Shown piece after piece: positions 12,759 through 57,822 of a DNA stretch of 64,000 nt (the stretch's first letter is position 1; every line of letters begins with the position of its first letter). Source of the DNA: Diadema antillarum (taxonomy: Eukaryota); the NCBI RefSeq assembly GCF_040938485.1, contig NW_027270924.1, positions 4,154,001-4,218,000 on the forward strand, read 5' to 3'. The notes beneath the pieces were generated by a model, which was not told where the DNA came from, did not search any database, and saw nothing but the letters and a program-made list of their open reading frames with translations. A program made the position numbers and the translations under genes.

Positions 12759-12810
12759 CGTCAACCCAGGAAGCAATGATCGTTATTAGCAAGCAACCAT
12801 GGAATCGACT

Positions 12811-12950: not shown

Positions 12951-13014
12951 ATTGATTTCACTGACATTAGCACGTTAAGATGCGATACAAGCCATTAAAT
13001 CTTTGAAGGGTTAA

Positions 13015-17863: not shown

Positions 17864-18992
17864 CTACATATTAGTGAAGTTCATATAGATTTCTTCCTGC
17901 ATCGTTGGCTCTGACTCAACCCTAGAAGCTCCTCGTGTTTTATCCACCTGTGCATACAGCTCCTCACACGGTGGCGGTTCTGCGACCGAAATGTTACCTA
18001 CTGTTTTGTTCACCGTCGCGTACATGTCCTCTCGGGTTTGGGATCTTGACGTAAAACTCTCCGGGTTCTGAATCTCAGTGTCGTGACAACCATGGAAGCT
18101 GTCCCCTTCTCCCATCTTAGGACGAAGATCATTGGCGAAGTCTTTTTCAGGATTCAACAGACTATAATCTCCAGAATCGAAAGCTTCAGGACATCGCGGT
18201 TGCTTGTTGGTATCAATGTCACGTTGTTGCTCCGGATTCAGTTGATAGTAGAAGACGTCTTCAAAAGGCATGGCTGTCATGGCATCCTTGCTGGAACAGG
18301 GCTTATTATATTTTCTGTCAGGGTAGATCCTATGTTGTGAAGTTTGACCAATAGGTGACAGACCAGGATTGCGACTTTCCTCGTCAGGGAAAGCATGATT
18401 GAGGCGATCGTACTCGCTTTCTGTAGTCATTTCGGATGAATTGGGAAATAACGTCAGTGAATTGTAATAACTGTCATCAAACAAGCACGCTTTACCAGTG
18501 GATCTAATGGCACCATTCATCCTCCCGTCCAATTTACAAAGGTCTACAGCCTGGTAGTCATTATCATCTCCATAAGCACACGCTGGTTGGTCCAGCGATG
18601 TCTCCTGCAGGCCACAATATTCATTATCAGAAGGAATATTGATTGAGGTCAAAGAAGTGCCGATGCCGGTATTTATGTGACTTTCGTCAGGAACTGTACA
18701 AGGGAAGCCACGATTTATGCTGATAAAGGTAGAAAGCCCCTCGTCTATCTCTTCAGCATCTTGGTAGATGTGACTAGTGAGCCCGAGATGGCCCCCTCTG
18801 TCTCCGACGGTGTTGCCCAGAATATGAGGCAAAAAGCTACCAGCTGTTGTAGCATTGGGATTGGTAGCGTCCGACAAAACGGCATGGTTCGTCGTGATTG
18901 GCTCTTGTACAGAAGTGTCGATGGGATTCATCTGAAGCTGTCCGCCATTTGGTTGAACATTTGACTGATGCGAGGTTTGGGATCTCCAATGT
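17864..18992 (-). CDS. Gene A terminal exon: cytoplasmic tail with many Tyr motifs
   Basis: Open 376-codon exon after a TGCAG acceptor (phase 2). Motifs include SYYNSL, SEYDRL, VFYYQL, DYSLL, MYATVNK, LYAQVDK and IYMNF. Confidence 0.85.
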
Positions 18993-21900
18993 CTGCAATT
19001 TAATGGGGAAATTCAATTTATGATTTTACGCATGTGACCGTGCATCGCAAAGCCACCAAAAAGTCGCCATACATGGATTTTTAGTTAAGAGTAGATTGTG
19101 GAAGAGCAGAATCTAAGATTTAAAATGAAATATATACGTCAGTGCAAACAGACTTGCCAAACCAATTTAAACAATGGAAAGACAGGCACGCTTTGCAAAA
19201 GTGTGTAGTCAAAAGAGAGGCTTTCAACTTTCGGGTCTATAGGCAAATGTGTAATTTCCCCCAGCTGTCTGCAATGAATGGAACAAAGAAAAAAGATATA
19301 AATTTCCATGAAAATCACAATTAAGTGGTTATTAAACTAAACTGAAAGTTTACTCATCATTAAAGTACGTTATATTTATGGCCAATATAAACTTCAAATG
19401 CAACATTAGTGTGATTTCAATTATTAGAGATGAAAACTGTTTGAAGGGTTTCTAGTGTTTTAAATCGGTAAATCTGAGAAAGCCTACATCAGACCGAAAC
19501 AAAGTATTTGAAAAAGTGCAAAAGAATCATGGTGCGCAATCACATAGTATAATGTCGTTGTATCGACAGCGCTTGACGCGTGACCATGTAGTTTAGCGTA
19601 ATAAAGTCGGAAATCCTAGAGCTGACAAAAAGAGGTATATTCATTTTGCCCTTTCTTCGTGTTCACCCGTGCCACTTTACTTTTGATTAGGTTCATTTCA
19701 ATTTGAAGGTCTAGTAAGCTTGACTGCCTATTGTTATATCATTCGAGGCTTTCTCCCTGCACCCTATTCAGACGACTGGTGAGAATTTTCAATAATTAAA
19801 GACTCGGTAGCACTGGAAAATGTGGGTGTCCGATTGAATCGGTCTTAATTCGCTGCCCACCGAGGCATATTCGAAACAACGAATAGTGCTCGTCAGCCAG
19901 TTGTTTTAGGGACGATTCTAGTCAAGATTTTTCTTCTCCCCTTCCCCCTTTTTTTTAAATTTTAGGCTGAGTATGTACTTGCACACCAGTGATCAGTGAT
20001 AAAACTGTGCACAATTTGTTACGGGGATTTTCGAATATACCCGAACCGGGCCCGCCTTTCGAATCCATGTATCCCCACGACACGGGGTCTATAAAAGATG
20101 CATTATTTTAAAAAATAATAATATTTACGAAATCAGCAAATTAAATCAAGATGAATGTCTTTTATTGTTTTAAAACAATACCACAAGGCTGACTCAATAC
20201 TTGGACTTGGACTGGGAGAGATACTCATCTCGTATGATAATCCTGCATTCACAAATTGGCAGTCTAACCACTCACACTCGCTTGACAGCCTCCAAAATTC
20301 AACTCCACATCATTTTGTCTTTGCTTGTTTTTCTGTGTTGTCCGTATCCTTTTCTCTAGTTTTTTGACTGTGTAAACATAGGCGGCTCCTTGCCATTGAT
20401 TTGGTGGTGGTTTTCGTAAAATATGTTGAAAAAAATACTGTATCAATGAAAGTTTTGGGCGACAGATGGAATAATAACATGATAAAATGTCTGGCGACCA
20501 GAAACTCGGGTTTTCGTGATAACAAGTCCACCCACCAATAGTTATGTAAGAAGAATACAAATCAGCAAACTTACTTCAACATTCATGTGCAGTCAGTAAT
20601 GTACACTCACTTCTGAATATGCTTTACTCGTTTCCTGGGTTGCATACAATGATTCCACACCCTAGATTTACAAACTAGTTTTCACAAAAATTCACACCCC
20701 CATTTCCTTACAGCCCATATAATAGTTTGTATTAAAAAAAAAAGTCACCTTTTCTTTTGATGTTTCCACCAAGCCATTATCATGGACAGTATGACAAGCA
20801 CGGCGAAAACAGCACCAAGAAGGGTTCCCAGGATGTAAGTAATAAAATTCATCTCATAAAGTTCGGTATCTGGTTCGGTATCTGGAAGATAAATCATTTA
20901 GTGAGTCCATCGTCACCTTAAAAATCAATGGAGGAAGAATTTGCTCTCGTAGTTTTTTTTTTCTCTTTTATGATGACTATAGGCAGAAATTACGTTTGTT
21001 TGTTTTTATAATCAGATCAAATCATTATGAAGAGAAATAGTTCTATTCTGTAACCTGGCAAGATTTCTCACTTTGCTGAATTATCGCAGTATACTAACAT
21101 TTAAAAAAAAATTTTTTTTTGCTGTTGACGAGTGACTGTTAAGATAGCATGAGATGAGAGACTTCAGAAAATCAGATTATTCGTGCCCGGTTTGAAGTGT
21201 TGTACTCATAGAAGTTCACACACTTGACGGAAAGAGCATAATTATGGGAATTATTACACAAATTCGTATAAGCAGATTCTGAAGTGATTACTGTAGTCGA
21301 AATGTTTATCACAACAGTTCCCAAGTCCCTGATTTACATTCAGGCAGAGCATTCAAACCTGACCAAAACTGTAAACGAATAAGGGATTAACAAAATTGTA
21401 AATGTTTACTTTGCATAGGCAGACGTAATGTACTTGATCGCTTTTGTAGGCCATATTCACGATTGGAGCTTTTTCAAGAAAATGCATTTCTGTTCGACCA
21501 ACGCAATGTGTTCTATGACAGTAACGATACTACGAAGACCTGATAAAGTCGCCAGACATAATATGTTTTCTTCAGTCCCTGTTGAAAAAAAGCACATTAC
21601 AACTTGCCATTTCTTCATGGACAATGGGTATTCTGACTTTTGAATATGCATCGTCTTTCTGTCTGTCTTGCTTTACTGTCTGCGACTTTCGTCTTATAAT
21701 GTGTTCATTGAGATATGAACTCAACTTACAAACTTTCATATAAAAAAAAAAGAACTGGGCAAACGCTTTATTGATTCCAATATCATTTTAGTATCAGACA
21801 TTTTTGTCATCATAAATAAAGCAGTAGCACTTTCATACCTTGAATTTAAATTCAAATAAAATGATGTCGAATTTACCATGAATTGTCACCCGTGGTTCGC

Positions 21901-32240: not shown

Positions 32241-33129
32241 TCCACTAGGGCGCGGACAAGACGCGGACAAGACCCGGAAAGCAAATTTAGTAATTTCGCA
32301 CTCATTCGGCAGCCTCTTCGCACGTTCTTGAAAGAGTCCGTTCACTGTCTTAAACATGTCCGGGCGTTTCCGCACTTTCGGGAGAGAGAAAAAATTCCGC
32401 GTCCAAATTTTGATCGTGTCCAACATTTGGACCCGGAAATGAACTTCCTGACACCTCCGGCAGCTTGTCATGAGAACATCTTCAGGACATCCCGCCTGTC
32501 CGAACCCTTCCGCTCCTTCCGCAAACGCTCCTGAAAAAAAAAATCCCGCGGAGTGGGGAAGCTTCGCGAATGAAAGCGGAAGACAACCGGAATGTTTCAG
32601 GACAGCACGGTGCCGATGCGGATCTATATGCAAGTGTCCGGAGCCAATGCGGACATTTTGTGATCAAGACATGAAAGAGTCAACACGTTCCATGTTCGAA
32701 AGGATTTTGAAACTTAAGAAGATAGATCAATGCAGCATCATGTCAGTGAAACGCAAAAAGACCAATAAGGGAGGCGAGGTCCCCATGCTAGTCCCACAGC
32801 CAAACCTCTCTTCCACTGATTAGGAACAGGTAAATATCAACATTTCCCAGACCCAATTTTAAATGAAGAAAACAAAGCAGAAGGCAGTGGATATTTTGCC
32901 AACAGTAACTAGGAAAAAGTGGAAGCAGCAATTTCGCGCTTTTCCTGAGCGATTCTAGGACATTCCTAAGACATACCTATGTTTGTTTGCAGTCAGTCCG
33001 CAGAGATTCCTAGGAATGTCCCAGCACAAGCCGATTCGCACATGTTTTCCGCGTCTGACGCGGACAGGATGTCGAAATGACAGAATTTTCTTCCTCAACC
33101 CTTCCTGGGCTTGTCCGCTCCGTAGTGGA
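32241..33129. mobile_element. Non-autonomous TIR DNA transposon (~890 bp); contains the empty Polinton target site
   Basis: TCCACTAGGGCGCGGACAAG ... CTTGTCCGCTCCGTAGTGGA, with internal GCGGACA/TGTCCG repeats. Superfamily not assigned (CACTA-like motif but no clear TSD). Confidence 0.7.
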
Positions 33130-33180
33130 CGTCAGCCCAGGAAGCAATGATAGTTATTTGCAAGCAACCATGGAATCGAC

Positions 33181-33320
33181 TGCTTTGGTTCCCATCCGAA
33201 GGACTAGGCAATGTGATAAAGTGCCTTGCTGATTGGGCACAATCGCTGCAGGCAAGGGATTCAAACCAAGTACAGCCTGATTGATAATTCACGGGCTTAT
33301 CCACTGAGATCGAACAGCTC
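33181..33320 (-). mobile_element. tRNA-derived SINE fragment (duplicate of 12811-12950)
   Basis: A-box-like CTCAGTGGATAAG and B-box-like GGTTTGAATCC on the minus strand. Confidence 0.65.
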
Positions 33321-33385
33321 CATTGATTTCACTGACATTAGCACGTTAAGATGCGATCTAAGCCATTAAATCTTTGAAGGGTTAA

Positions 33386-38495: not shown

Positions 38496-38526
<31 letters not shown>

Positions 38527-40786
38527 TAGGCTGAGTATGTACTTGCACATCAGTGATCAGTGATAAAACTGTGCACAATTTGTTACGGGGATTTTCGAAT
38601 ATACCCGAACCGGGCCCGCCTTTCGAATCCATGTATCCCCACGATACGGGGTCTTTAAAAGATGCAATTTTTATTTCAAAAAATTATAAGAGTCATATTT
38701 ACGAGATCAGCAAATTAAATCAAGATGAATGTCTTTTATTGTTTTAAAACAATACCAGAAGTCTGACTCAATACTTGGACTTGGACTGGGAGAGATACTC
38801 ATCTCGTATGATAAGCCTGCATTCACAAATTGGCAGTCTAACCACTCACACTCGCTAGACAGCCTCCAAAATTCAACTCCACATCATTTTGTCTTTGCTT
38901 GTTTTTCTGTGTTGTCCGTATCGTTTTCTCTAGTTTTTTGACTGTGTATACATAGGCGGATGGCTCCTTGCCATTGATTTGGTGGTGGTTTTCGTAAAAT
39001 ATGTTGAAACAAATACTGTATCAATGAAAGTTTTGGGCGACAGATGGAATAATAACATGATAAAATGTCTGGCGACCAGAAACTCGGGTTTTCGTGATAA
39101 CAAGTCCACCCACCAATTATGTAAGAGGAATGCAAATCAGCTAAATTACTTTAACATATTCAATGTACACTCACTTCTGAATATGCTCTACTTGTGTCCT
39201 GTGTTTCATACAATGATTCCACACCCTAGATTTACAAACTAGTTTTGACAAAAATTCACCTTTTCTGTTGATGCCTACACCAAGCGATGGACAGTATGCC
39301 AACTACAGCAAAAACAACGAGAAGGATTCCCAGGATGTACGTAATAATATCCTTCCCGTCACTCTCATGATCTGGAAGATAAAGCATTTATTATTTAAGA
39401 TACATTATGGATACACGATATTTATATACATGTATAAACTGTATATTCCTAATGTCACATTTTATTTCGATACAATTACTAAAAAACATGATGTAATTAT
39501 AATGTTTGATAAAACGTCTATATTGAAATGAATTACAGATTATGTAAACATACATATACTATGAAAAATAGTTTGGATAGTAAAGTAGTAATTTAAGTGT
39601 ATAACATCAAAATCTGATCTATAGGCAGCGGGTTAAGAATTTCCAAAATAATAAAAGAATAACGGGGGAACAAAATAATTATGGTCATTGATATTGCTTA
39701 CTTTATACTTCACAGTATTACTTGGCCCTTTTGCACAATGATATGGATGTAATTTTATTGCACTCGTATACCATTTTCCCTCATTAAGCTTCTTTTATTT
39801 TGTTCAGGAAAATGCCTTTTCATCAGATCAACGAATATTTGCTTTATGGTAGTTACATCACCATGAAAATCTGATAATCGATGAGAAAGAGTTTTCTTTT
39901 TAGTTCCTGTTGAAGAACGGCGCTTTGCACCATTTATTCAAAGACATTTTTGTTATTCTTGTATCATAAGAATTGAACACTTCTTCTCTCTGAGACAATA
40001 ACAACTTCAAAACTTGAATCCAGTTCATAATGAATTCGCTATGAACAAACGATGAAGAACCACATCTAGTGTCTTTCCATCTAAACAAAGTGGTGAAACA
40101 ATAATGTATTTTAGGCGATGGTAGCGAAGTAGTCCTAATGTAATTATGCGTATGCATGGTTAATGCGTTAAGAGGTAAAAGTGGAAACAGTAGAAGCAAA
40201 GGTATATATATATATATATATATATACATATATATATTTTTTTTCTTTTTTTTTTTACTGCGGGTCGAATCAATTACTAAACTCACCTGACTGAGACGTT
40301 TCAGTTGTCTCTCGCAATGACGTAATTGCTTGGGTAATCTGCGCCTTCCCTGTGTATTGAGATAAACCCACCGCAATTATTGATGGTATACATGCTGATG
40401 ATATAATGTCCTAAACACCTATTCTCAAGATGGAATATACGTTTATAAAAGATCTATTTATCTGTAAGATATCAGAATTTTGTACGTGGTGATAAAAGTA
40501 TTAAAAGTTGTAGACCATGAATGCTGATAATGGAGATGTTGACATTGCACAGGCCGCCGACCCTCACCCCCCCCCCCCCCAGAAAAAAAAAAAAAATATA
40601 TATATATATAACTATATCTGGCTCTCCCTAAACAAAAATATGGGGAAGAGGACTCAGAAGTCCTGATAGCAAAAAAAAAAATCAACAGAGAAAATCCAAA
40701 ATTCCGCCATGAGATTCTTCCCCTCAAAGGGAAATATACACTACACAGAAAATTGACCCTCGACCCTCTTTGGCGCGGTCATCGCC

Positions 40787-40832
<46 letters not shown>

Positions 40833-43800
40833 AGTCACATGGTCCCTGCACTGTATTGAATTCATGCCATTGTCTTGTAATTGTATGTCCCAAATTAATT
40901 TAATAGTAAAAACAAAATGAAGTGATAGGTTTTGCAGATAACAGAAATTTAAGCAGCTAGTCGTCATTTCTCTCAATGTCTGCATGGAAACTTCATAATT
41001 ACCATCTTTTTTGTTGGTGGTGACGTTTATTCCAAGCGCATAAGTGCCTTCGAGCTTACACTCTAGGAAAATTCCAAATATCAATTATTGTTAACATTAG
41101 GCGTTTTCACATCAGCCCGATAAAAATCCAAGCTCGAGATATTTTTCGTAGAAAATAGTCAGCAAAATAGCGCGCTATTTCGAAACATCGGGCTGATGTG
41201 AAAACGCCGAATGTGATCATTTTATCATTACACACAAAGTTTTGCTTATAAAGTTACAACGTACTCTCTAATGTAGTACATACCCTGAGAAGTGCTTTCT
41301 ATACTTTGTGTAGGCATTGTGGTGATATTGCCATCTTGCCACTCTGCATCTGTGAAAAAAAAAATCCCATCCACAAAAACAATGACAAACTTATGGAAAG
41401 GTGTGTGAAATCACAGCAAAGAAAGGATGAAATTCAGTAACTTCATGGAGTTCAAATCAGTGGTGCCTGTGGTGTCGTAATCTAACGTGATCAGGTGGTA
41501 AAAATGCCCATCTCTTTGGCATATTTTCAAATTAAGAGAAGGAAAACATGCAGTGAGCATTTCAGAGCACGTATCATGCTCATGAAAAAGATATACCGAT
41601 TATAAAAATAGATTGATATTTCCCAATGAATTACTTCACGGGATACAATACGATTGTGTATAATTTCGAGAAATGGATAATTTTGTTGTTAAGCATTGTA
41701 TCCTGTCACTTTGATTGATTTGATTTCATTTATTTCCTCATTCAATCAGATACAAATTTAACTGCACAAATTTCAAAAGTACAAAGACAAAGAATAGCAA
41801 GTGCAGTGAAATAAATCGATGACAGTACACAAATAGATACACATAAGTGATGGCATTGAGCAGTATACATACACAGAAACATGAAATAAAATATATAGTA
41901 TTTATTTTCAAGAAATAACAGAGATAATTGAATGCAGGAGACCGCCATCGTAAACGATTAAGCTTGAAATGGATGGGGGCCTCAATGCATTTGAATGACT
42001 ACTAGTAATTTCAATTTTTCTCCTATCATGCCTATCAATATTATGGCAGTATTAATTCCCACTGGTGCGCTCTACGTGGTGTGTTTTAGGTGAAGGCTCA
42101 AATGGCACACATTTTCATCATCCGCACTCATATGACGATAACTCTCGGAAAATCTAAATGTTTACAAAAAAACAAAAACAACAAATCCGCATTTTTTTTT
42201 TTAATATCATTTGCAGCTCCTCCCTTTCAGATATAATGTAAAATGTTGTATTCTTATTTCTCTTACACTATTGCACAAAGCAGAGATTTTTAAGATCTTA
42301 ATCATTGATAATATATTTTCAAATTGATGCCGTTTGTTTTACTTTCGACGGCTCGGCAAGAAGGGACCGAAGCGTTCCAAACCGGGAAGTAAGTCGACCA
42401 TCCTGGTAGTCCCACACACTGCAGTATCGCACTCCCGTTGACGGTGTAACCTTTGTCACAGATGAGAGTTATCTTCGACCCGAAGCTCGTGATATCCGTG
42501 TCCCAACTTCCATTGGGCACAATCTCAGGATGATCACAAAATCCGACAGAGACTTTCAATAAAGGAGACATGTATAGGGAATTCCCATGAGCCATGAGGG
42601 AAAACTTGAAATAATCATATCATTGCGATATATTACATGGAATAATCATTATTAAGAAAGATACTATAGTTACGTAAACAGATTAACTTTTGTATCGCTT
42701 TTGGTAAGGTTCAGATGCCTGTTCATCTGCCAAATTAAAAGATTAGCTGACTAGCACAGAACGTAAACATAATTATAAACATTGATTGTATTCGATAACA
42801 GTAAATATATAGGAGTTTAATTTTGTTATTAAACATGTCAAATATATGAACCTGACAAAGCATATTACAGGTATTAACCATGTTAACAGTCGCTGACAAA
42901 TTATACTGTCGTCATTATCATCACTGATGCTTGCCTACATTTATTTCACTCTCTGATGTCAAGAAATCTTTGCTTGTCGGATTACTCACGGTTAAATGAA
43001 TGATGTCGGTCGTAGTCAAATTCTGTCGCAAGTGGACATGTCCAACTGTGAGAAAAGTTTCCGCCAGAAATGATCTGCGCATACGTCTCGGACTGAAAGC
43101 AAATGCACAATCCTTCATGCATGACAGCAACGCCATTGCTTTCGGGCTGTCTTCTACATGTAGACATGCACTCGCTTTCCGAATCAACTCCAAATCCGGT
43201 GTTAAACTCTGTTTGAAAGTTTAGTTGGTTGTCTTTGTAGCATCCAAGAAATGCAGGCTCTACGCAGTGACAGAATATTATGATTATTTCAACCTTCCAA
43301 TACCTGATACTTTGAAGTGTGCATTATGGCCAATACATTTTAACAACAGCTAGTCACAAAATCATCCCTGAAATTACAGTTTGATAAGTGTTTCTGTTTG
43401 AATACAGGTTAATTACTTTACATCTGTAGCGCCTGAAAATATCAAACACATACATGCATACATACATACATACATATATGTGTGTGTGTGTGTTGACAGC
43501 GGAATCTATGGTTCTTAACAGTGTCTAGTTTCATTCCACCAAACACAATTAGCGACTAAAAGAACACTATGTTCGCATACATCAAACACACTAATTCACT
43601 CTTTCCATGCGACGTATATAATATAGAGTCACACAAAAGCATAAGAATAGATATCAATATGTTTGCGAACGTCTGGACTTTATGAATGATAAGAATATAT
43701 AAATGTTTTCATAAGACATTTTGAATCTCTTACCTCGGCATTGGAGTCTAACAATCCTGTTTGAGAAACACTCGGTTGCTGTCAAACAGTCCATTACACG

Positions 43801-46800
43801 CAGCGAATCTGTGTATTGATATTGTACAAATCGTTCATGAAATAGATAAAGTTTGAACGCCGCATTTCTCATAAAAGTTTGATACACATATAACGGCTCT
43901 CATGTGTAATATGTAAAAAGAAAATAGCTACATAGTAACAAAACACAACGACAATATCAGCAATGAACGCAATTGGGCATTAATAAGTTTGTGTGAAGAG
44001 AAAATGAATCTTATTCTAATGAACGTTTGATTGCTGCATTTATACCATTAAGTACTGTCATCCAGCGTCAAAGAACATAGTCATTTGTAAGTATTATTTT
44101 TCATCATTGTGTATGTCTGTAGCAAGAAAACTGGCAGTATAGTTTAAAAATAGAGTTTATTATATAAGGAGTTTTGAAATATCGGGAAATTAAAATGTTG
44201 CACGTTAAGAAAACGAATCATGGCAATGACAAAAGGCCTACCTCATTAGCTTTAGTTTATGTATTTCCATCTTTAAATATATTGCAGAGTTACGTCGGAC
44301 ACAAAGTGTGCTTTGTAGCAATCAAGTTTATTTGATGCGATACATGCTATTCTTTCTGGGATATGGTATACATATACATTCACACATTCTGATCTGCATG
44401 CATGTAATTCTGCGGTTACCTTTACGACATGACACCACTTGAATCCTGTGTCGTGTTGCTGTAGTCATACTGGCCAAACTTGAATGACCCGTAAAGCCCT
44501 TTGCAGCCGGGAAGCCTAGCTCTTCGCAGACCAATTCAGCAGCTTTGTCGGTAAATCCATCATAGCAGACGTATTTACCCGATTCGATAACCACCAGGCC
44601 TTCAAGGGGAGAGCGTCCGTCAGCCAACTTTACCGATGGTATCTCTTGAAAATTAATGACCAAGGTTCGAAATGTTATTTAAAGTAACTAATAATCTGTA
44701 AGCAATCATTCATGTCGTAGCTCATTCGAGGTGAAGACGATTATCAGAGTTATGGTCTAAACCTTTCTTCGAGTTATACACTGTATAGTTTCCCTTTAAC
44801 AGTTTCTCAAAAGGAACAGAAGAAGCAATGCGATTCATAATTTTTTTTGTCGTTGTTTTTAATGCAGATCGCACTCTGCTTTAATTCTCCTCCCCACATT
44901 ATTTTGGGAACGATATGACGAAACTGAATAAACTTTCGTGAGTCAACTGGCATCAATAGAATCCATAAATGCAATTCATACGTGACGTAAAGATCAATAA
45001 TAACGCTTATAGTTATAGAGATTACTCAGTATCAGCGAATGTCGAGATATCAATCTATTAACTAATAGTCGGTGAGCCTACTTGACGGCTTTCTGTTCAT
45101 CCGGTATTGGAATAAACATTTGCATCAATTTGAGTACAATATACAATACAATAATACATTATGACAGATATGGATACAGAATGATGGCTATTATGTGAAT
45201 TGATTTTCACAACAACACTCATGGGCAACAACACAACACGTTTACAACGACATTAATAAACTCTTTCTGTTTTGTATTTTTTTAAGGATAATGGCCAGGC
45301 TATCTACCAACGAAAAAAAAAATGTCAAATTTGCCGGATACTCCCCATTGCAATAGCAATCGAGTATTTTCCAAGACAAATTACTGTCGCAAATTAACGT
45401 GGAAATCGATCATGTATAACCTCCCCAAAAGAGTTCTCAGTTTCATCATTAATGCGTGTATAGATTCTCTGCCCTCCTACACAAATTTGCACACCTGGGG
45501 TAAACGCCTAGTTTTTTGTGTCTTCTGCCCGGGCACCACAGGCACTTTGCATCACATACTCTCAAATTGCCCAGTTTTTTCTAGATCGATGCGAGTGGCG
45601 ACATAACAATTTGCTGAGGTATATGTATAATACATTTTTTGAAAATCTGTACAACGGAACGATTTACACTGATCTAGAAGGGCACTCAATCTCCGGGGGC
45701 ACCATACCTCCCCATATTCTCACTACAAGTTTGCGCCCAGATTTAGTTATCTTAAGGAAGAAGAACAAGATATCACGATTGTTGAACTAACTGTTCCCTT
45801 TGAAATGAACCTCGAGGATGCACATCAAAGGAAAGTAGAAAAGTATAATTCAATTGTGCGGGATATCCAGGATAAGAGCTACTCAGTGTCATTTTATGCG
45901 ATAGAAGTCGGTGCAAGGGGTCTAATAGACCGGGGTAATAATGCCGTTTAAAACGAATTCTGAAAACAACAAGTTCCAAGATTTGTCCGAATGAATTGTT
46001 TCAGACACTCTCTAAACTCGCCATACTCTCCTCTTCTTCGATATTTTATGCTAGAAAAGAGAGAGCTTGGGGGAGGTACGGCATCTAGATCCGTAGGATT
46101 TAACTATAGTTATGTAATATTCATACCGACCATGAAGCCGAAGTGGAAGTACAGTAATAACGTATGTTTGCCGGTTTGTCCGTCTGATCGTAATCATTTT
46201 ATTTGTAAATTGTATGTGTTATGTACGTGATATAATTTCAGAATATTGTTTGAGATATAATTGACATAGATACTTATTGTTTGTACAATATATGAGCGCA
46301 GGTGTTTATGGTTTATAATTATGTGGTATTGGCTGTAGAGTTTGGGGGGAGGTACGGCATCTAGATCTGTAGGATTGAATTATAGTTACGTAATATTCAT
46401 ACCCACCATGTTTTCGTTTTGAAGCCAAAGTGGAAGTACAGTAATATGTTTGCCGGTCTGCCCGTCTGTTTATAATCATTTTATTTGTAAACTGTATGTG
46501 TTATATATGTGATATAATTTCAGAATATTGTTTGAGGTATATCATATATGATATAGATATGTATTAATTATGAGCGCAGGGGTTTATGGTTTATAATTAT
46601 GTGGTATTGGCTGTAGATTTTTTTTTCCGGGGGAGGGGGGGGGGGGTGAGGAGGAGGGTAGCCGCAGGTAGGAGATGGGGATAGTTGGTGAAAGTTTAGT
46701 TTGTCGCTGCGGCTGGTTTGGATTTCGTATAGATTTTTGTGTGTGTGTTTTTTTGTTTCTGTTGGGAAAGGAAAGGAATCTGAGGTCAAATGATATGTTC

Positions 46801-49676
46801 GGAAAGGTGAGATGAGTTTATTGTTATACATTATAGATAATGGGTGAATGGGCAATTGAAAAAATGTAGAATATTTTGTTTATAATTTTTGGTTTTATGT
46901 TGAAAAGGGTATATAACATGTATAATATAGTTGTAAAGAGGGGTTTTGATTATCATAATAGGTGGTGGGGGGTATGGGGCAAGTATAAGTTGGTGAAGAT
47001 TTGATGAGATGGTGATGATGATAATAAGGTTTTATGTATTGTATGTTTGTATATTTATCTTATTATTTTATAATGAGGATAATTGTATTAATATTGTGGA
47101 AGATAATTATACAACCGTTGTTATTGTTATGCAGAAATAGTATATGCATTGATATTTGATTGATTAATTAATATTTAATCAATTAATTGACAGTTTATGT
47201 GTAATATGATATGTATATTTTGTGTTGCAGTAATGTAAACTCCAATATTGTTTTCTGTACCCCATAAACTTGTCTTAACCTGTCATTCGTTTTGAATGAA
47301 ACGGTGGACCTGGTCCTTTTGTATATATGTAATTCTAACATTCCTTGAACTTGAATAAAGTCATGATTAAACAACATTTCGTATGTTTCTCTCCCCTGAG
47401 CCACAACGATCCCATGAAACAATTCAATTTAATTTAATTCAATTCATTTTTATATTTCGCAATGAAGGAATGTACATCAAATATAATGAAATAAAGTGAA
47501 TCAAATTATCCGGCTACGATGCACAATAAATTATAGTAAACATATTGAAAAAAAAAACATGGCGGTCACTCTTCGTAAATTTGGCTCTCTGTATAAATGC
47601 TAAAGAAAAATGATGGGCCCTACTTAAAAGCAAGCTTGTTAAGCGTAGGTCCCAAATTCTGAACAGAGGGTACAAAAACGCATGAGGAGCACGGGTGCAA
47701 CATAATATAGGACCAAAATATAGAAAACAAAACTGAAAGGCAAGGATCTCCGGGGAAATAACGGATTGTTCTCAAATACACATAGTGAAAACAAACAAAT
47801 AACCACATTCTGTTGACGTATACATGAACAGTTGTTTTAGCGATGTTAACAATATGGTGTGATAATACGATTTGAATAATACTGCAAACACTCGACATGT
47901 GGGTCCTCAGAAGAACATGGGAAGCCTTTAATAAGGGAGAGAGAACATGCATGTACTAACAATTCAAAAAAGATTTACCAGCTAGTAGCAACGACGTGAG
48001 TACAACAAAGCCAGTTGTTAACGAGTTCCAAAGTATAAATTACTAGTATACTGATTTGGAGGAATTTATGAGCGCAAACAGCGAGGCTCAACGATTTGAA
48101 TGACAACAACCAAGTACATAACAGCAAAACGCGCATAAACAAGATAGAAAGAAATTTCAGTGGACTTACGCAATGTAATTATCCTATAAATTGTGTCCTA
48201 ATTTGTACTGGGAGATCGTTCAAGTATTTCGGTCCTGTATACATAACTGTTTGTCAATCACTGAATATTTGTATACTGTATACATAAAATGACATTTTGA
48301 TACATTGTATTATGGCTTCGATTAAAATGAGGTAGACATATATGACACGGCATTCAATTACTTTGTGTACTTTCATTTTACTTCTATTTTATGTCACTGT
48401 TTCATCGCGTCTTTTACGTTTAAAGACTGTAATCTATTGTTTTTTATATAGTAATGCGTGTCAACTGAACGGAGTGCGTCCTCGTTGTAGATCTTCATGT
48501 TTCACTTTAAAAAAAAAAACACGTTGTCAGCCATTTTGAAATCACACGGCTTTTTTTACAATCATTGTCAACTCATTCCTAAAGATTTTATGTCCTGTCA
48601 TGCAAATGGAAACATCAGGTTCCGAATAACGGAGGGAAAAACAAGTGTTGAAGTATATAAGCAACAGTCAGCGAACAGTTGTGTTCATGCTATGGAAACT
48701 GACTACACTTACCTTGGTAACACTTCACGTTCATGTTGAATCTCACAGGGTAGATATATATACAATAACTGTAGCTTCGTCTGATGGGTGAGCGATAAAA
48801 GGGGAGAATACTCTGTGTCTTTCACTATCAGATTCCGAGATTTCTTGCTTGCTATTTCGTCAAGTCTTTCGAATAACACCAATCCATTTTTGTTGGTATT
48901 GAGGGTGTAGAGGATTCTTCTTCCAAGGGGTGCAAGGAGAACCCAACTATCACGGTTGTCAGCGCAGGTTCGGTTACACCATATCTCCCGTTCCAGTGAA
49001 ATCCCCGAACAATTTAGACTGAAATCTGCGTGATGATAAGAATCACAAAGAGTGCACGTAAATCAATGAATCAATATGAGAATAGTAATAAAATGAACAA
49101 TGAAACATTCCTCTATTAGTACTCGAGCTGATGTTAGTTCGGTGACATGATTTAAGCCCCAACTCATGTACTATTTCTTACCAAATTCTTTGAACGCATT
49201 CGTCTTCCTGGAGGTAATAGCCCAATAGTTAAGTTATATATTGCTTTCTTTCAATAGCGTAGCAGATTTAAAAAAAAAATGATAAAGGTTAACTTAATAG
49301 AACCTAATTACTCGTGGGAATTTTTAGAACAGAGGTTCAAGCATATCTGATATAACATCCCATTCTTGCGTAAAGACTGACATGCTTAACCCAGTGAAGT
49401 GGTCCCACCTCACATCCAACTGGACCCCATGGAAGACCAGCTTAACGTAGTTGAATATGGGCTATCCAGCCATCTTCTCAGATGGAAAATGAACAAACAA
49501 ACAAACAAACAATAAGAACTGAGAAAGAGAGAAATGTGCGAGGTATGTCAATGATGGAATGAAAATTGAAAGGTATACCTACATGTATTAGTTCCCAATG
49601 CTGAGGACCTCATAGAAGGATTGCAAAACATGAAATGAGCAGAAATCCATACAAGGAATATCATTCTTTCCTCCAT
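36411..49676 (-). CDS. Receptor gene B, paralog of gene A with the same architecture (~832 aa if exon 2 is resolved; possibly a pseudogene)
   Basis: Manual exons 49676-49583, 49025-48713, 44644-44420, 43808-43734, 43259-42990, 42552-42331, 41062-41003, 39371-39260 and 37539-36411. Exon 2 is 313 nt (3n+1) and the sushi exon donor is GC. Confidence 0.8.
39260..39371 (-). CDS. Gene B transmembrane exon
   Basis: DHESDGKDIITYILGILLVVFAVVGILSIAWCRHQQKR; CCAG/GTGAAT boundaries, phase 1-2. Confidence 0.85.
42331..42552 (-). CDS. Gene B sushi/CCP exon
   Basis: FCDHPEIVPNGSW...LICDKGYTVNGSAILQCVG...VWNASVPSC; all four Cys and the Trp are present. Confidence 0.85.
42990..43259 (-). CDS. Gene B WSC domain exon
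   Basis: FLGCYKD...ECMSTC...VAVMHEGLCIC...WTCP; 270 nt, about 58% aa identical to gene A. Confidence 0.8.
43734..44644 (-). CDS. Gene B SRCR domain split over two exons (44644-44420 and 43808-43734)
   Basis: VKLADGRSPLEGL...YVCYDGFTDKAAELVCEELGF...VSC / MDCL...ECFSNRIVRLQC. Confidence 0.8.
45340..46020 (+). mobile_element. Decayed 3' fragment of an RLE-type non-LTR retrotransposon (HERO/NeSL-like)
   Basis: DSLPSYTNLHTWGK, zinc knuckle CVFC...HILSNC, WRHN, LRPDLVI, VELTVPFE and IEVGARG, spread across frameshifts. Confidence 0.85.
46068..46620. repeat. Two tandem ~275-bp copies downstream of the RLE fragment
   Basis: GGGAGGTACGGCATCTAGATC(C/T)GTAGGATT at ~46070 and ~46346 with colinear downstream sequence. 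Confidence 0.85.
47421..48245 (-). mobile_element. Second, more truncated copy of the CR1/L2 family at 14041
   Basis: (AATTC)n tail, then AATGAAGGAATGTACATCAAATATAA, GTAGGTCCCAAATTCTGAACAGAG and GGAGATCGTTC, all matching 14041-14900. Confidence 0.85.
48713..49025 (-). CDS. Gene B exon 2, divergent CUB-like domain
   Basis: NCSGISLEREIWCNRTC...SWVLLAPLGRRILYTL in the entry frame; YPVRFNMNVKCY in the +1 frame before the GTAAG donor. Confidence 0.55.
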
Positions 49677-52650: not shown

Positions 52651-52689
<39 letters not shown>

Positions 52690-54889: not shown

Positions 54890-55265
54890 TATTTTCGGAT
54901 TAACAAACCTTCGGAATAACAAACCTTACATTATTTTTGGATTAACGAACCTTTGGAATATCGAACTGTTTTTCAATTTCAGATTGAAGAATTTCCGGAC
55001 GAACGAACCTTATGATCAACAAGCCATTGGAAATCTGAACTTTATTTAATTTTCGGATATTCGAATCTATTATTTATTATGTTAGGATTAACGAACCTTC
55101 CAAATTCCAAATTTCATATCATTTTTAGACCAACGAACCTTCTGAATTACTCCGCAAATTTTCGAATTAAGGAACCCAATTTAATTTTTAAAATAACAAA
55201 CATGTATTTAAAGGGAATTTGTGTGTTACGGAATAACGAACATCCGGATTGACGAACATTACCCA
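54890..55265. repeat. Degenerate array of AACGAACCTT(C/T)GGAAT-type units
   Basis: About ten recurrences of TAAC(G/A)AACCTT / TTCGGA motifs. Confidence 0.6.
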
Positions 55266-55342
55266 TCGTAATCCCCAACTATATTCGTCGCTGTTGTGAA
55301 ATTATTTTAATACCAGTTTGCAAAATAAGTATAAAGGCATCT

Positions 55343-56710
55343 TTACAGTTCTGGTTCGCGAGGAATACTCTCATACACTGTTGAATTGAAGTGATCTTCT
55401 GTTTGGGGGGAAATTTCGTTTTCGTACAAATCTATCTTTGTGGAAGACAAGCTGTTGTGGCTCTCACAGCCATCATTGACGCTTTCACCAGGATCTGCTT
55501 CTAAAACGAGATAGCCATGTTCATCCATCTCATGCTCCACTCGTGACCCTCGGGTCATTGCATAAGGGCCAAATTCGGCATTTCCTTCAATATTCCAGTA
55601 GGTAGGACAGTACTGCGGTTCTGGAATAGGCGCGGATTGTTCGGAAGCTGAGGGAATTTCGTGGTAAATTGACGATTGGCATTTCCCACATTTGTCATCT
55701 ACACCTCTGGCCTGAATAGATGACGCTATGCTGATTTCTTTACCACATGGTGACACACTTGCTTTAGGTTGAAATCTAGTAGCTCTGTGCAGACTGACAT
55801 TGGAAAGGAGGTAGCCGTCTTCATCAATATCTTCTTCCTCTTTATTAAAATGCCTGGATTGAAGAAATATTACCTTCTTCTTCCCTTTCTTCTCTGAACC
55901 TGACATGTCCATGTATAGTGCTTTCGTGTTATCCGCTGCCTCATTATTACACTCGTGTTTACCACCCTGGTGTATGACGTCATGAGGACATGATCTAGTG
56001 TATGCTGAACCTCTCCCGCTCCTCTGTCTAGTTTCACGAGATCGGTCCGTTGAAGATGACGTATGACCCTGTATCAGGAAACCCACAAAAAAAATCGCCA
56101 GGAGGCATATCTATATGAGGATAGCTTCTGAAAAGGGAAATATAATTACTCAGCAAACTTTCATGTTTCCTCATCATCAAAATACATGATTGGAAATCAA
56201 AACAAACAGGAATGATGCTTTAGAGAAAAGGAGATCCGAAAAATACCGTCTATTCTAGTGCAATGAGTCAACTTATGTCGACGATTTGTGTGTGGACTAA
56301 GTCGACATTCAAAACTAAAAAGCAACTACAGGTACAGATTGTCAGATAGACGTAGATCTCGGGGCACTTAGTTGCATTAGTTTAGCATGATCATATCAAA
56401 ATATCAAAGGTACCGCTGACTGAAATATACAGTGGACTCCCGTTATAACGAAGTCCTCGGGACCGGCAGTTTTCTTTCGTAATATCGAAATTTCGTTGTA
56501 AATGAACAGTGTTAAACAATTAATAAACAAAACAAAACATATAGTGGATAATTTTGCGGAATTGTATCATAATCGTGTTCGATATAACGAGAGTGCAGTG
56601 CACTGTAATCACCTACGTTTGCTCGATGGAATGAGATAAAAGAATTTGCTCTATATCAAAGCCCGCAACACGCTCTGAATTGAAATACACTCACACACAC
56701 ACACGCATAC

Positions 56711-56758
<48 letters not shown>

Positions 56759-56817
56759 GTTGAGGGGTTTCTTGCTTTCTGTTCCTTTTTGAAGAATGCT
56801 CACCCCCTTAAGATATG

Positions 56818-56849
<32 letters not shown>

Positions 56850-57822
56850 ATAACACTTTCACATGTAAAACCACAACCTGCGAACCCGAATTTATGTGTC
56901 GTTAATCACCTCTGCTGAGTTCTCATACGTGTTTTCTCGGTGACCGATGGCGCCACCAGATTTGTTGTCTGGATGTTGAGGCAAAACATAAGTGTCGATA
57001 CTGGTAGAGTGCAATAAAACAACGCCGTCTGTTGAGCCTGGTGTCGAAGTGTTCAGAGGATTCAGCTGCGACTGCTCTTCACTTGAGTTGACATTTGACT
57101 GACCAGAAGCCTCTGTACGCCTGTATTACATTATGTAAAATAAAGAGGAAAAACGTTAAGGAGTGAATCCATACTGTCAAACTGGAGGAGATGTAATTAT
57201 AGACCGCTTAAAAAAATAAAATAAAAATAAAAGAGTTATGAGACATTATTACTACGTAACCATAAATTAGCTAGTATAGTTTAATACAAAAGAAAGTTTT
57301 AACTTTTTGTTGAAAGTTTTGATGTGATTAGAATTCCATTGAGATGTAGCTTTCCTCTTTTTATTTTCAGTTTAGATTTGATTATTTTCATTATCAGTAT
57401 GTTACAAAACATCATCAGGAGAATGCACTGATAGGTAAAACAGCAAATTCTAGCTGAGATGTTTTCTCCTCTATTTGATCCCTTGATAAGGTATGTTTAT
57501 TCAGTGTTCACCGTTGTATTGGTGGTGAGATTTTGCGAAATAAGTAACAAAAATATCGTTATAATGACAGAATTACAAAATCAGAAATTCGATTCCCATT
57601 GACTTTAATCATACTGTTGTGATGACCTGTTACCACTAAATAAATAAACCACCCCTATTCCCTTTCCCCATATAATAGTTTGTATTAAAAAAAGTCACCT
57701 TTTCTTTTGATGTTTCCACCAAGCCATTATCATGGACAGTATGACAAGAACGGCGAAAACAATGCCGAGAAGGGTTCCCAAGATGTACGTAATCCCACAA
57801 AGTTCGGTATCTGGTTCGGTAT
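55343..57822 (-). CDS. Receptor gene C, 3' part: TM exon plus two-exon Tyr-rich tail; ectodomain exons presumably beyond 64000
   Basis: Exons 57822-57699 (DTEPDTELCGITYILGTLLGIVFAVLVILSMIMAWWKHQKKR), 57120-56910 and 56068-55343, phase-compatible and open. Motifs LYMDM, SIYHEI, TYWNI, LYENEI, TVYESI and TYENS. Confidence 0.85.
56430..56605. mobile_element. Tc1/mariner (pogo-like) MITE
   Basis: TA|CAGTGGACTCCCGTTATAACGAA ... TTCGATATAACGAGAGTGC(AGTGC)ACTG|TA. Confidence 0.65.

What the first reader, a model, noticed from the sequence alone, without database searches (positions are those of the whole stretch)
17864..57822. Tandem cluster of CUB-like/SRCR/WSC/sushi type-I receptors with long tyrosine-motif tails: candidate invertebrate immune or recognition receptor family
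Seen in sequence: three paralogs, none captured whole by the ORF track, can be spliced with consistent phases into signal-CUB-like-SRCR(6 Cys, two exons)-WSC-sushi-stalk-TM-tail. A/B ectodomain exons are only about 50-70% aa identical while their tails are about 90% identical. The A/B tail has three matches to the ITIM consensus (S/I/V/L)xYxx(L/V/I) (SYYNSL, SEYDRL, VFYYQL), YxN sites and YATVNK/YAQVDK. The unrelated-looking C tail has YMDM (PI3K-type YxxM), three YxN (Grb2-type) sites, SIYHEI and an ITSM-like TVYESI. Established: SRCR and WSC domains bind microbes or glycans, and ITIM/ITSM/YxxM motifs recruit SH2 proteins. Inference: a diversifying pattern-recognition family whose members couple related ectodomains to different signalling tails, like vertebrate paired receptors. 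I do not recognise a named family with this architecture.
Basis: partly seen in the sequence, partly recalled or inferred. Interest (0 to 1): 0.75.

Follow-up and report, generated by a model that had tools for sequence, protein, structure and literature searches.

The report
Diadema CUB-SRCR-WSC-sushi receptor gene cluster
This stretch of long-spined sea urchin (Diadema) DNA holds two complete genes and the rear end of a third for single-pass surface receptors of a type already catalogued in echinoderms, whose long tyrosine-rich inner tails have been exchanged between gene copies; their function and expression remain untested.

Summary
A (29717-17864) and B (49676-36411), both on the minus strand, each splice cleanly into 10 exons. 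All splice sites are GT-AG and the frames stay open (855 and 840 aa). The order is signal, divergent CUB, 6-Cys SRCR on two exons, WSC-like, sushi, two stalk exons, TM, tail.

Only two stalk exons, the TM exon and two tail exons of C lie in the window. Its ectodomain was not found.

The family is not new. NCBI annotates at least 60 clusters (at 90% identity) of "uncharacterized" relatives in D. antillarum and D. setosum. A Lytechinus relative has Pfam CUB-SRCR-Sushi with the same exon layout. Acanthaster Apl028/029 are listed as signal-SRCR-WSC-Sushi-TM.

"Diverged heads, conserved tails" is better explained by sequence exchange. The A and B tails sit in a block about 95% identical that includes non-coding DNA (tail dS 0.06, heads 0.5-0.8). 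Head dN/dS is 0.3-0.5, so diversifying selection is not shown.

Both head types occur with both tail types in both Diadema species. Tail tyrosines are the best-conserved residues (0.68 against 0.35).

No RNA data were available, so an immune role is inference. This scan met the same family before on other pieces of this genome.

The parts
29621..29717 (-). Gene A exon 1: ATG plus candidate signal peptide (hydrophobic core, phase-1 donor)
   Evidence: start MEGRM matches B's MEERM; GT donor. The signal-peptide reading is inference; no predictor was run.
29047..29328 (-). Gene A exon 2: divergent CUB-like module (94 codons, phase 1-1)
   Evidence: no Pfam hit. The paralogous B exon aligns to the Lytechinus Pfam-CUB at E = 7e-6.
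26277..26498 (-). Gene A exon 3: SRCR first part (3 Cys)
   Evidence: Pfam SRCR 24.1 bits. The junction SCSNG|SLRLDEC is as in NCBI model P0055.
25416..25493 (-). Gene A exon 4: SRCR second part (3 Cys)
   Evidence: P0055's SRCR match spans both exons at 34.8 and 37.4 bits.
24263..24532 (-). Gene A exon 5: WSC-like domain (6 Cys)
   Evidence: PF01822 20.9 bits, below the 27.8 cut-off; 17 of 21 family members hit WSC; weak PAN/KREMEN1-WSC fold rows.
23351..23572 (-). Gene A exon 6: sushi/CCP with the third Cys replaced by Trp (TGG at 23436-23438)
   Evidence: Pfam Sushi 19.7 bits, below the 20.7 cut-off, profile positions 1-41 only. The donor giving KETN|DDEWED is confirmed by P0055 and P0001, which carry Cys here.
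22737..22802 (-). Gene A exon 7: stalk 1 (22 codons)
   Evidence: 100% identical to P0055.
22055..22123 (-).
   Evidence: tblastn with P0001, 96%; splice sites.
20749..20881 (-). Gene A exon 9: transmembrane helix plus KHQKKR stop-transfer (donor phase 2); 86% identical to the C TM exon, 56-61% to B's
17864..18992 (-). Gene A exon 10: AB-type cytoplasmic tail (375 aa, 15 Tyr) with stop
   Evidence: 91% aa and 95.4% nt identical to the B tail; Tyr conservation.
12235..20695 (.). Block 94-98% identical to 32606-39259 (tail exon, TM-tail intron and downstream intergenic DNA): the footprint of a recent exchange or duplication. The breakpoint at 20695 lies in the TM-tail intron.
   Evidence: Self-blastn.
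49583..49676 (-). Gene B exon 1: ATG plus candidate signal peptide
   Evidence: 100% aa identical in the NCBI D. antillarum contig L001.
48747..49025 (-). Gene B exon 2: divergent CUB-like module
44420..44644 (-). Gene B exon 3: SRCR first part
   Evidence: Pfam SRCR 30.2 bits.
43734..43808 (-). Gene B exon 4: SRCR second part
42990..43259 (-). Gene B exon 5: WSC-like domain
   Evidence: PF01822 17.3 bits.
42343..42552 (-). Gene B exon 6: sushi/CCP, four Cys intact
   Evidence: Pfam Sushi 39.8 bits. The junction AVE|N-AEWQD is as in P0021.
41284..41349 (-). Gene B exon 7: stalk 1
40287..40349 (-). Gene B exon 8: stalk 2 (21 codons)
   Evidence: tblastn with P0021, 75%; splice sites.
39260..39371 (-). 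Gene B exon 9: transmembrane helix
36411..37539 (-). Gene B exon 10: AB-type tail with stop
62510..62572 (-). Gene C: B-type stalk-2 exon copy with intact AG/GT, lying in DNA about 86% identical overall to B intron 8 (92% over the stretch around this exon)
61351..61419 (-). Gene C: A-type stalk-2 exon. The canonical donor is TT instead of GT; an in-phase GT lies 9 nt further on.
   Evidence: 96% identical to D. setosum P0037.
57699..57822 (-).
56910..57120 (-). Gene C: tail exon 1, 32-36% identical to the start of the AB tail
   Evidence: 100% identical to P0043.
55343..56068 (-). Gene C: tail exon 2 (C-type tail carrying YMDM, DEDGYL, SIYHEIP, DEHGYL, LYENE and TVYESIP) with stop

Best explanation
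The window carries part of a tandem array of Diadema members of an echinoid-wide subfamily of the SRCR superfamily. These are single-pass type-I membrane proteins built as signal, divergent CUB, one group-A-like SRCR (6 Cys, two exons), WSC-like domain, sushi, short Ser/Thr-rich stalk, TM helix, and a long disordered cytoplasmic tail.

A and B are complete genes. C is the 3' end of a third gene whose head probably lies beyond the window.

The array evolves by exchange of whole 3' modules at the introns around the TM exon. A's tail and downstream DNA are a recent copy of B's, or the reverse, while A's stalk-2 and TM region matches C. This creates genes that pair either head type with either of two tail classes.

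Inferred, not shown: the proteins are surface recognition receptors for glycan or microbial/particulate ligands. They have no kinase domain and would signal, or be sorted, through conserved tyrosine short linear motifs in the tail. After phosphorylation by a cytoplasmic tyrosine kinase, these motifs would dock SH2/PTB proteins. Candidate motifs are YxxV/YxxL and YxN in AB tails, and YMDM, DE[DH]GYL, SIYxEIP and TVYESIP in C tails.
For: Gene structure:
- Two 10-exon models are in frame with GT-AG throughout. Their junctions are identical to those of NCBI models of relatives.

Domains:
- SRCR and Sushi are recognised by Pfam on the exons, and above cut-off on relatives 88-94% identical.
- WSC is the sole Pfam hit of that exon, in 17 of 21 members.
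- The CUB-like exon aligns to a Pfam-positive CUB.

Conservation beyond Diadema:
- S. purpuratus XP_011675583.1 and a L. variegatus 'SRCR superfamily protein-like' model match at 34-36% identity, E = 1e-28 to 1e-30.
- The Lytechinus locus has the same exon layout, with SRCR split at the same place.
- Acanthaster Apl028/029 are listed as signal-SRCR-WSC-Sushi-TM.

Exchange:
- 12235-20695 matches 32606-39259 at 94-98%, non-coding DNA included. 20695-22376 matches 57650-61673 at 87-89%.
- Tail dS is 0.064 against 0.38-1.17 in the other A/B exons (0.49-0.82 in the CUB-like, SRCR, WSC and sushi domain exons).
- In NCBI contig JBFRCO010000912.1, an A-like head runs straight into the C tail.
- All four head and tail combinations exist in Diadema models.

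Tail constraint:
- In 31 tails less than 60% identical to A, Tyr is the most conserved residue (0.68 against 0.35; permutation p = 7e-5). Ten of 15 Tyr are kept in at least 74% of them.
- C-type motifs are kept in tails only 40-60% identical.
Against: - There is no transcript evidence. The only runs holding this DNA are genomic.
- There is no ligand, cell-type or phosphorylation data.
- Single-exon WSC scores are below Pfam's cut-off. The structure models were weak: CUB-like pLDDT 40, WSC pLDDT 65, best Z 3.4.
- A has lost a canonical sushi cysteine, and its tail has dN/dS 0.68 against B. C has a mutated donor. Some copies may therefore be decaying.
- YxxPhi motifs fit clathrin-adaptor sorting as well as SH2 docking.
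- The window matches no annotated NCBI protein exactly, so the haplotype or paralog status of the locus is unresolved.
Confidence: 0.6

Rival explanations
1. These are endocytic scavenger or adhesion receptors. The tail tyrosines would be YxxPhi / LL-type sorting signals for clathrin adaptors, driving uptake or recycling of bound ligand, and not phosphotyrosine docking sites.
For: Several conserved motifs fit YxxPhi or a dileucine signal: YNSL, YSLL within FDSGxYxLLNP, YATV and YAQV. Many SRCR-superfamily receptors are endocytic (established knowledge; PMC10855680 introduction).
Against: Nine to ten conserved tyrosines spread over 375 residues is far more than a sorting signal needs. Acidic residues flank most of them (EELY, EEIY, SEYD, DEDGY), which is typical of tyrosine-kinase substrates. 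YMN and YMDM fit Grb2-type and p85-type SH2 preferences. All of this is inference from motif knowledge.
Confidence: 0.2
2. One reading: a diversifying pattern-recognition family in which positive selection drives ectodomain divergence while tails are conserved, forming functional activating/inhibitory pairs like vertebrate paired receptors.
For: Heads and tails are recombined in all four combinations. In the closest available comparison (window A against the A-like gene of L001) the WSC exon has 15.5 non-synonymous against 1.5 synonymous changes, omega 2.7. Three ITIM-consensus matches occur in the A tail, against a shuffle probability of 0.011.
Against: A/B head dN/dS is 0.31-0.47 in every domain exon. 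The WSC excess rests on 17 changes and no significance test was run on it. The tail similarity is explained by a 95%-identical block that includes non-coding DNA. Neither TM helix has the charged residue used by vertebrate activating partners. The +3 position of SEYDRL and the -2 position of SYYNSL are not conserved in distant paralogs. Both tail classes are long multi-tyrosine tails, so opposite signs are not evident.
Confidence: 0.12
3. Part of the cluster is non-functional. A and/or C would be decaying by-products of unequal crossing-over in a fast-turnover array, and are not expressed as receptors.
For: A has Trp in place of the third sushi Cys, whereas P0055, P0001 and P0023 keep Cys. The tail dN/dS between A and B is 0.68. 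C's stalk-2 donor is TT, and no C head lies in the window. NCBI annotated no protein identical to A, B or C.
Against: Both A and B keep open frames over 2.5 kb and 18 canonical splice sites each. D. setosum keeps orthologous architectures (P0001 for A, P0037 for C). C has an in-phase alternative donor 9 nt downstream.
Confidence: 0.08

Closest known systems
Echinoderm SRCR-WSC-Sushi type-I receptors catalogued in the SRCR superfamily survey (Acanthaster planci Apl028 and Apl029; PMC10855680, Table S6)
   Same: Signal peptide, one SRCR, WSC, one Sushi and a single TM helix, in the same order. The same paper counts 36 WSC-, 38 Sushi- and 35 CUB-containing SRCR genes in S. purpuratus, mostly in tandem arrays.
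   Different: The starfish entries have no CUB listed, and their tails are only about 80-140 residues. The Diadema genes add an N-terminal divergent CUB and tails of 312-376 residues in two classes. Only domain tables were available for the starfish proteins, not sequences, so direct homology was not tested.
Lytechinus variegatus 'scavenger receptor cysteine-rich domain superfamily protein-like' (P0074) and S. purpuratus XP_011675583.1 (P0073)
   Same: 34-36% identical to the A-like ectodomain over 75-77% of its length. Pfam finds CUB, SRCR and Sushi in P0074, and SRCR plus a WSC-like domain in P0073. The Lytechinus gene has one CUB exon, SRCR split into two exons at the same point, one WSC exon and one sushi exon.
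   Different: Both models are partial and show no TM helix or tail. No TM or tail exon was found within 10 kb downstream in Lytechinus. Whether the tyrosine tails exist outside Diadema is therefore unknown. All 70-odd tail and head relatives found by word search with tails attached are from Diadema.
Vertebrate paired immune receptors (KIR, LILR, SIRP, Ly49 and similar)
   Same: Tandem arrays in which near-identical or related ectodomains are joined to different cytoplasmic parts by exon or segment exchange. ITIM-consensus strings are present.
   Different: The ectodomains are unrelated (Ig or C-type lectin against CUB-SRCR-WSC-sushi). No short-tailed partner with a charged TM residue is seen. 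Both tail classes are long and tyrosine-rich. No functional data exist.
Kinase-less multi-tyrosine engulfment or recognition receptors (Draper/CED-1/MEGF10, PEAR1)
   Same: Type-I receptors with mosaic cysteine-rich ectodomains and disordered tails bearing several conserved tyrosine motifs that recruit SH2/PTB proteins. This comparison rests on established knowledge and is inference here.
   Different: The ectodomains are EGF-type, not SRCR/WSC/sushi. The NPxY and canonical ITAM spacing of Draper are absent here (YNSL to YDRL is x14, and the second motif's Leu is not conserved).
KREMEN1/2 (kringle-WSC-CUB type-I receptors)
   Same: One of the few animal type-I receptors combining WSC and CUB. 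KREMEN1's WSC region is among the top, though weak, structural rows for the WSC-like exon model (Z 2.8-3.0).
   Different: Different domain order, no SRCR or sushi, and a short tail. The structural match is far below significance.

Membership tests
SRCR superfamily (group A-like SRCR) | A domain matching the SRCR profile | tested here: met
Exon 3 alone scores PF00530 at 24.1 bits (A) and 30.2 bits (B) against a cut-off of 26.1. The natural relative P0055, 88-94% identical to A, scores SRCR 34.8 and SRCR_2 37.4 bits across both exons.
SRCR superfamily (group A-like SRCR) | Six cysteines, and a domain encoded by two exons (group A), not eight cysteines on one exon (group B) | tested here: met
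   There are 3 + 3 Cys on exons 3 and 4 in both A and B. The Lytechinus gene is split at the same point. The group definitions come from PMC10855680.
WSC domain (PF01822) | Profile match above the gathering score; eight conserved cysteines | tested here: inconclusive
   Scores are 17.3-20.9 bits against a cut-off of 27.8, and the match covers only profile positions 1-56 of 82. The exon has six Cys. WSC is nonetheless the only family hit, in 17 of 21 members, with a best E of 4.5e-6. The AF2 model has pLDDT 65, and the top VIA rows are PAN/apple domains and the KREMEN1 WSC at Z 2.8-3.4. A PDB profile search found nothing.
Sushi/CCP (PF00084) | Profile match and four cysteines (C1-C3, C2-C4) | tested here: met
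   B scores 39.8 bits with all four Cys. For A the feature is not met: 19.7 bits is below the 20.7 cut-off, and the third Cys is Trp.
CUB (PF00431) | Profile match to CUB | tested here: not met
   The A and B exons have no Pfam hit even at E = 10. A HMMER profile search of 1.84 billion representatives found one true relative only, P0011. The AF2 model has pLDDT 40.5 and shows only that the exon is all-beta. Homology to a real CUB is nevertheless likely: BLASTP of the B exon against the Pfam-positive CUB of P0074 gives E = 7e-6 around the W-x-I/L-x-AP-x-GRRI core. 'Divergent CUB' is a homology inference and not a profile membership.
ITIM/ITSM-bearing inhibitory receptors | (S/I/V/L)xYxx(L/V/I) or TxYxx(V/I) motifs in the tail | tested here: met
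   SYYNSL, SEYDRL and VFYYQL occur in A and B. The shuffle probability of three or more matches is 0.011. SIYHEI and TVYESI occur in C.
ITIM/ITSM-bearing inhibitory receptors | Motif flanks conserved among relatives | tested here: inconclusive
   The tyrosines are conserved (0.74-1.0). However, the +3 Leu of SEYDRL is conserved at 0.0 and the -2 Ser of SYYNSL at 0.4. YNSL as a whole is at least 0.9. In C-type tails SIY[HQ]EIP and TVYE[SN]IP are kept.
ITIM/ITSM-bearing inhibitory receptors | Tyrosine phosphorylation and recruitment of SHP-type phosphatases | not testable with these tools
   This needs biochemistry.
Paired (activating/inhibitory) receptor clusters | Related ectodomains joined to different cytoplasmic or TM modules within a tandem array | tested here: met
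   All four combinations are seen: A head with AB tail (window A, P0001); A head with C tail (L001/P0043, P0023, P0025); B head with AB tail (window B, P0021); B head with C tail (P0037, and probably window C).
Paired (activating/inhibitory) receptor clusters | An activating member with a short tail and a charged TM residue that binds an ITAM adaptor | tested here: not met
   The three TM helices have no charged residue, and all tails are 312-376 residues long.

The most novel reading that the evidence does not exclude
Diadema has evolved, independently of vertebrates, a modular 'paired-receptor' system. Recombination hot spots in the introns flanking the TM exon shuffle two unrelated multi-phosphotyrosine tails (AB-type and C-type) between diverging CUB-SRCR-WSC-sushi heads. 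The same ligand specificity could then be wired to two different signalling outputs, and some of this shuffling still segregates between haplotypes.
Probability: 0.2. Interest if true: 0.65.

Novelty: new variant of a known kind. Interest (0 to 1): 0.4.

Why it matters
Sea urchins are the textbook case of hugely expanded innate-receptor repertoires, yet almost nothing is known about how their SRCR receptors signal. This family offers a concrete, testable handle: single-SRCR type-I receptors whose only strongly conserved cytoplasmic features are tyrosine motifs, and whose tails are swapped between heads. If expression in coelomocytes and tyrosine phosphorylation were shown, it would give a signalling route for an echinoderm SRCR subfamily. 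It would also be an example of paired-receptor-like modularity outside vertebrates. Diadema antillarum suffered mass die-offs, so its immune-gene content has conservation interest. As it stands, the genes are uncharacterised members of a catalogued architecture. The main corrective result is that the pattern of conserved tail and diverged head reflects recombination and not selection.

Tried and rejected
- RNA evidence: the look-up of sequencing runs returned only three runs of one study, none recorded as RNA. Laying them on 39250-44700 showed contigs over introns and exons alike and no joints at exon borders, so they are genomic DNA. Expression therefore could not be tested.
- C ectodomain: tblastn with all A and B exons (word size 2) and sensitive blastn over 57822-64000 found nothing beyond the stalk exons. 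The last kilobase is a G-rich tandem repeat.
- CUB-like exon: Pfam found nothing. The HMMER profile search of 1.84 billion representatives gave one real hit, P0011, a chimeric NCBI model that joins a C-type tail to the next gene's CUB-like exon. The other nine hits were spurious, partial matches, and those scanned with Pfam are NHL/beta-propeller or other repeat proteins. AF2 on four sequences gave pLDDT 40, so no fold search was run on it.
- WSC-like exon: the PDB sequence-profile search gave only noise. Foldseek against PDB had no hit at E <= 0.001. VIA wide gave only Z <= 3.4.
- An alternative, longer 5' end for SRCR exon 3 (the VKCYDE extension seen in many NCBI models) was considered. In A and B no phase-1 acceptor exists upstream without crossing a stop.
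- Lytechinus locus: 10 kb downstream of the sushi exon showed no convincing TM or tail exon.
- The window's own proteins were not found among the NCBI proteins. The best matches were 88-94% for A, 84-92% for B and 97.5-100% for the C tail.
- All searches used single exons by reference, or natural database proteins.

Full report
**What is in the sequence.** The window is AT-rich eukaryotic DNA with no N runs. Comparing all minus-strand stop-to-stop segments with each other found paralogous exon pairs upstream of tails A and B.

Splice-site and phase analysis gave two complete models. Gene A has 10 exons from 29717 to 17864 (2568 nt, 855 aa). Gene B has 10 exons from 49676 to 36411 (2523 nt, 840 aa). 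Every intron is GT-AG, every ectodomain exon is phase 1-1, and the TM-tail intron is phase 2.

The junctions are not only my inference. NCBI models of close Diadema relatives use the same joins (P0055 is A-like at 88-94%, P0021 is B-like, P0001 is the D. setosum A-like protein). Examples are SCSNG|SLRLDEC, LKCR|EPGFLGC, YSFI|LSVGFC and KETN|DDEWED.

All searches used single exons by reference or natural database proteins.

**Domains.**
- SRCR. The first SRCR exon scores 24-30 bits on PF00530. P0055 scores 34.8 bits (SRCR) and 37.4 bits (SRCR_2) across both exons. The domain has 3 + 3 cysteines on two exons, which is the group-A pattern.
- Sushi. It is solid in B (39.8 bits) but falls below cut-off in A (19.7 bits), where the third cysteine is Trp. 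P0055, P0001 and P0023 have Cys at that position.
- WSC-like exon. It scores only 17-21 bits against a cut-off of 27.8. WSC is nonetheless the only Pfam family hit, and 17 of 21 family members hit it. An AF2 model (pLDDT 65) gives only weak structural rows. These are enriched for PAN/apple domains and the WSC region of KREMEN1 (Z 2.8-3.4), which is concordant but not significant.
- CUB-like exon. It has no Pfam hit, and its AF2 model is useless (pLDDT 40). However, a Lytechinus relative, P0074, has a Pfam-positive CUB in the same position (31.9 bits). The B exon aligns to it at E = 7e-6 around the W-x-I/L-x-AP-x-GRRI core. I therefore accept "divergent CUB" as a homology inference.

**Gene C.** Within the window C has:
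- a B-type stalk-2 exon (62572-62510);
- an A-type stalk-2 exon (61419-61351), whose canonical donor reads TT, with an in-phase GT 9 nt further on;
- the TM exon (57822-57699);
- two tail exons (57120-56910 and 56068-55343).

No CUB-like, SRCR, WSC or sushi exon lies between 57822 and 64000. D. setosum P0037 joins a B-like head to this same stalk-2 exon (96%) and a C-type tail. The likeliest reading is that C's head lies beyond the window.

The C tail is not wholly unrelated to the A/B tail. Its first exon is 32-36% identical to the start of the A/B tail. The second exon shows no similarity by BLASTP.

**Why tails look conserved and heads diverged.** Self-alignment shows that 12235-20695 matches 32606-39259 at 94-98%. 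This block includes the TM-tail intron and several kilobases of intergenic DNA. The similarity stops at 20695, inside the TM-tail intron. From 20695 to 22376, which holds A's TM and stalk-2 exons, A instead matches the C locus (57650-61673) at 87-89%. DNA upstream of C's stalk-2 exon matches B intron 8.

Nei-Gojobori estimates fit this picture. Tail dS is 0.064 with dN/dS 0.68. Its nucleotide identity of 95.4% equals that of the non-coding flanks. The CUB-like, SRCR, WSC and sushi exons have dS 0.49-0.82 and dN/dS 0.31-0.46. The short signal and stalk-1 exons are noisier (dS 1.17 and 0.38; dN/dS 0.47 and 0.86).

The contrast therefore reflects recent sequence exchange, by gene conversion or unequal crossing-over. 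It reflects neither purifying selection on the tails nor positive selection on the heads.

**Evidence from other assemblies.** The NCBI D. antillarum contig JBFRCO010000912.1 (L001) carries an A-like head and TM (88-94% nt) that run directly into the C tail and its downstream DNA (96.5%; coding 99-100%). B's upstream region follows (93%). That assembly is 1.73 Gb for a 0.70-Gb haploid genome, so haplotigs are expected. Whether L001 is an allele or a paralog of this locus is open.

Across NCBI models, both head types occur with both tail types, in D. antillarum and D. setosum alike.

**Family and distribution.** Word searches with the A tail, with P0001 and with P0055 returned about 70 clusters. 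Almost all are "uncharacterized protein" from D. setosum or D. antillarum, with precomputed SRCR and Sushi domains. Two lie outside Diadema: S. purpuratus XP_011675583.1 (36% identity, E = 1e-30) and a L. variegatus [quoted passage not shown] model (34% identity, E = 2e-28).

Pfam finds CUB, SRCR and Sushi in the Lytechinus protein. Its locus has the same exon plan, with a WSC-like exon between the SRCR and sushi exons that Pfam did not score, and with SRCR split at the same residue.

The SRCR superfamily survey PMC10855680 lists Acanthaster Apl028 and Apl029 as signal-SRCR-WSC-Sushi-TM. It counts 36 WSC-, 38 Sushi- and 35 CUB-containing SRCR genes in S. purpuratus, 70% of them in tandem arrays. 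The ectodomain core is therefore a catalogued echinoderm architecture.

I found no paper describing its tails or function. The tails were found only in Diadema, but only a word-index search was used for them, so this is weak evidence of absence elsewhere.

**Tails.** In an alignment of 39 AB-type tails, I scored identity to A across the 31 tails that are less than 60% identical to it. Tyr is the most conserved residue type (0.68 against 0.35 overall; permutation p = 7e-5). Ten of 15 Tyr are kept in at least 74% of those tails.

The conserved islands are HIYQDA, DYQxVDL, LFDxxxYNSL, SEYD, FYYQL, FDSGxYxLLNP, ExLYAxV(N/D)K (twice, and more often in some paralogs) and EExYMN.

The +3 Leu of SEYDRL is not conserved at all.

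C-type tails keep YMDMSGS, DE[DH]GY[LM]L (twice), SSIY[HQ]EIP, LYExEIS and TVYE[SN]IP down to 40-60% identity. This agrees with earlier notes s1-220835 and s1-220775.

**Mechanism.** Shown: the gene structure, the domain order, the exchange of 3' modules, and the constraint on tail tyrosines.

Inferred: a surface recognition receptor with no kinase domain, whose tail tyrosines are phosphorylated by cytoplasmic kinases and dock SH2/PTB proteins. The main rival is that the tyrosines are endocytic YxxPhi sorting signals.

An immune role is plausible by analogy with SRCR receptors but is untested. No RNA run holds this locus, and the three runs that do are genomic DNA.

**Verdict.** The diversifying-selection argument does not hold. 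The tail modularity and the tyrosine constraint do hold and are the interesting part. The same family was met before by this scan on other pieces of this genome.

Noticed in passing
window 23436-23438 (-): Gene A has TGG (Trp) where the third canonical sushi cysteine should be (MQWMG). The D. antillarum and D. setosum relatives P0055, P0023 and P0001 have Cys (MQCMG). It is a one-base change that would leave a cysteine unpaired. It could be a decaying copy, a rare allele or an assembly error.
   Followed up: partly
window 61349-61350 (-), just 3' of the C stalk-2 exon: The donor that is GTGAGT in gene A reads TTGCGT in gene C. An in-phase GTAAT lies 9 nt downstream and would add three residues.
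   Followed up: partly
L001 (GCA_040938485.1 JBFRCO010000912.1, 41475-65983, reversed) against window 20695-26812 and 53109-58336: In the NCBI D. antillarum assembly an A-like head (88-94% nt) is joined directly to the C tail region (96.5% nt), with B's upstream region following. This is a structural difference from the window. It may be a haplotype difference, because that assembly is about 2.5 times the haploid genome size.
   Followed up: partly
P0011 (385 aa, database protein): This chimeric gene model reads from a C-type tail straight into the CUB-like exon of the next gene. It shows that the family is tandem elsewhere and that automatic models mis-join neighbouring copies. Most NCBI models of the family also start at an in-frame Met just upstream of the SRCR exon and lack the signal and CUB-like exons.
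   Followed up: partly
window 45322-45603 (+), inside B intron 2: This ORF has a sub-threshold match to zf-RVT (24.5 bits against a 27.5 cut-off). It is probably a retrotransposon remnant on the opposite strand.
   Followed up: partly
window 41070-41251 and 41616-41979 (B intron 6, between the sushi and stalk-1 exons): Summed contig depth in three genomic runs is 100 to 1000 times that of the neighbouring DNA, so these are high-copy repeats. The sushi exon bin (42344-42525) is about 15 times and the WSC exon bin about 5 times the background. That would fit many paralogs, although summed contig depth is a poor measure.
   Followed up: no
window 55343-56068 (-), C tail exon 2: Window C and P0043 lack a roughly 13-residue segment (NDPLYAVSIYPST-like, with two Tyr) that the other C-type tails carry between YAMTR and RVEHE.
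   Followed up: no
window 14043-16072 and 12235: Relative to the copy downstream of B, the DNA downstream of A has an extra stretch of about 2 kb. Part of it (14041-14834) resembles 47421-48218 at 75%.
   Followed up: no
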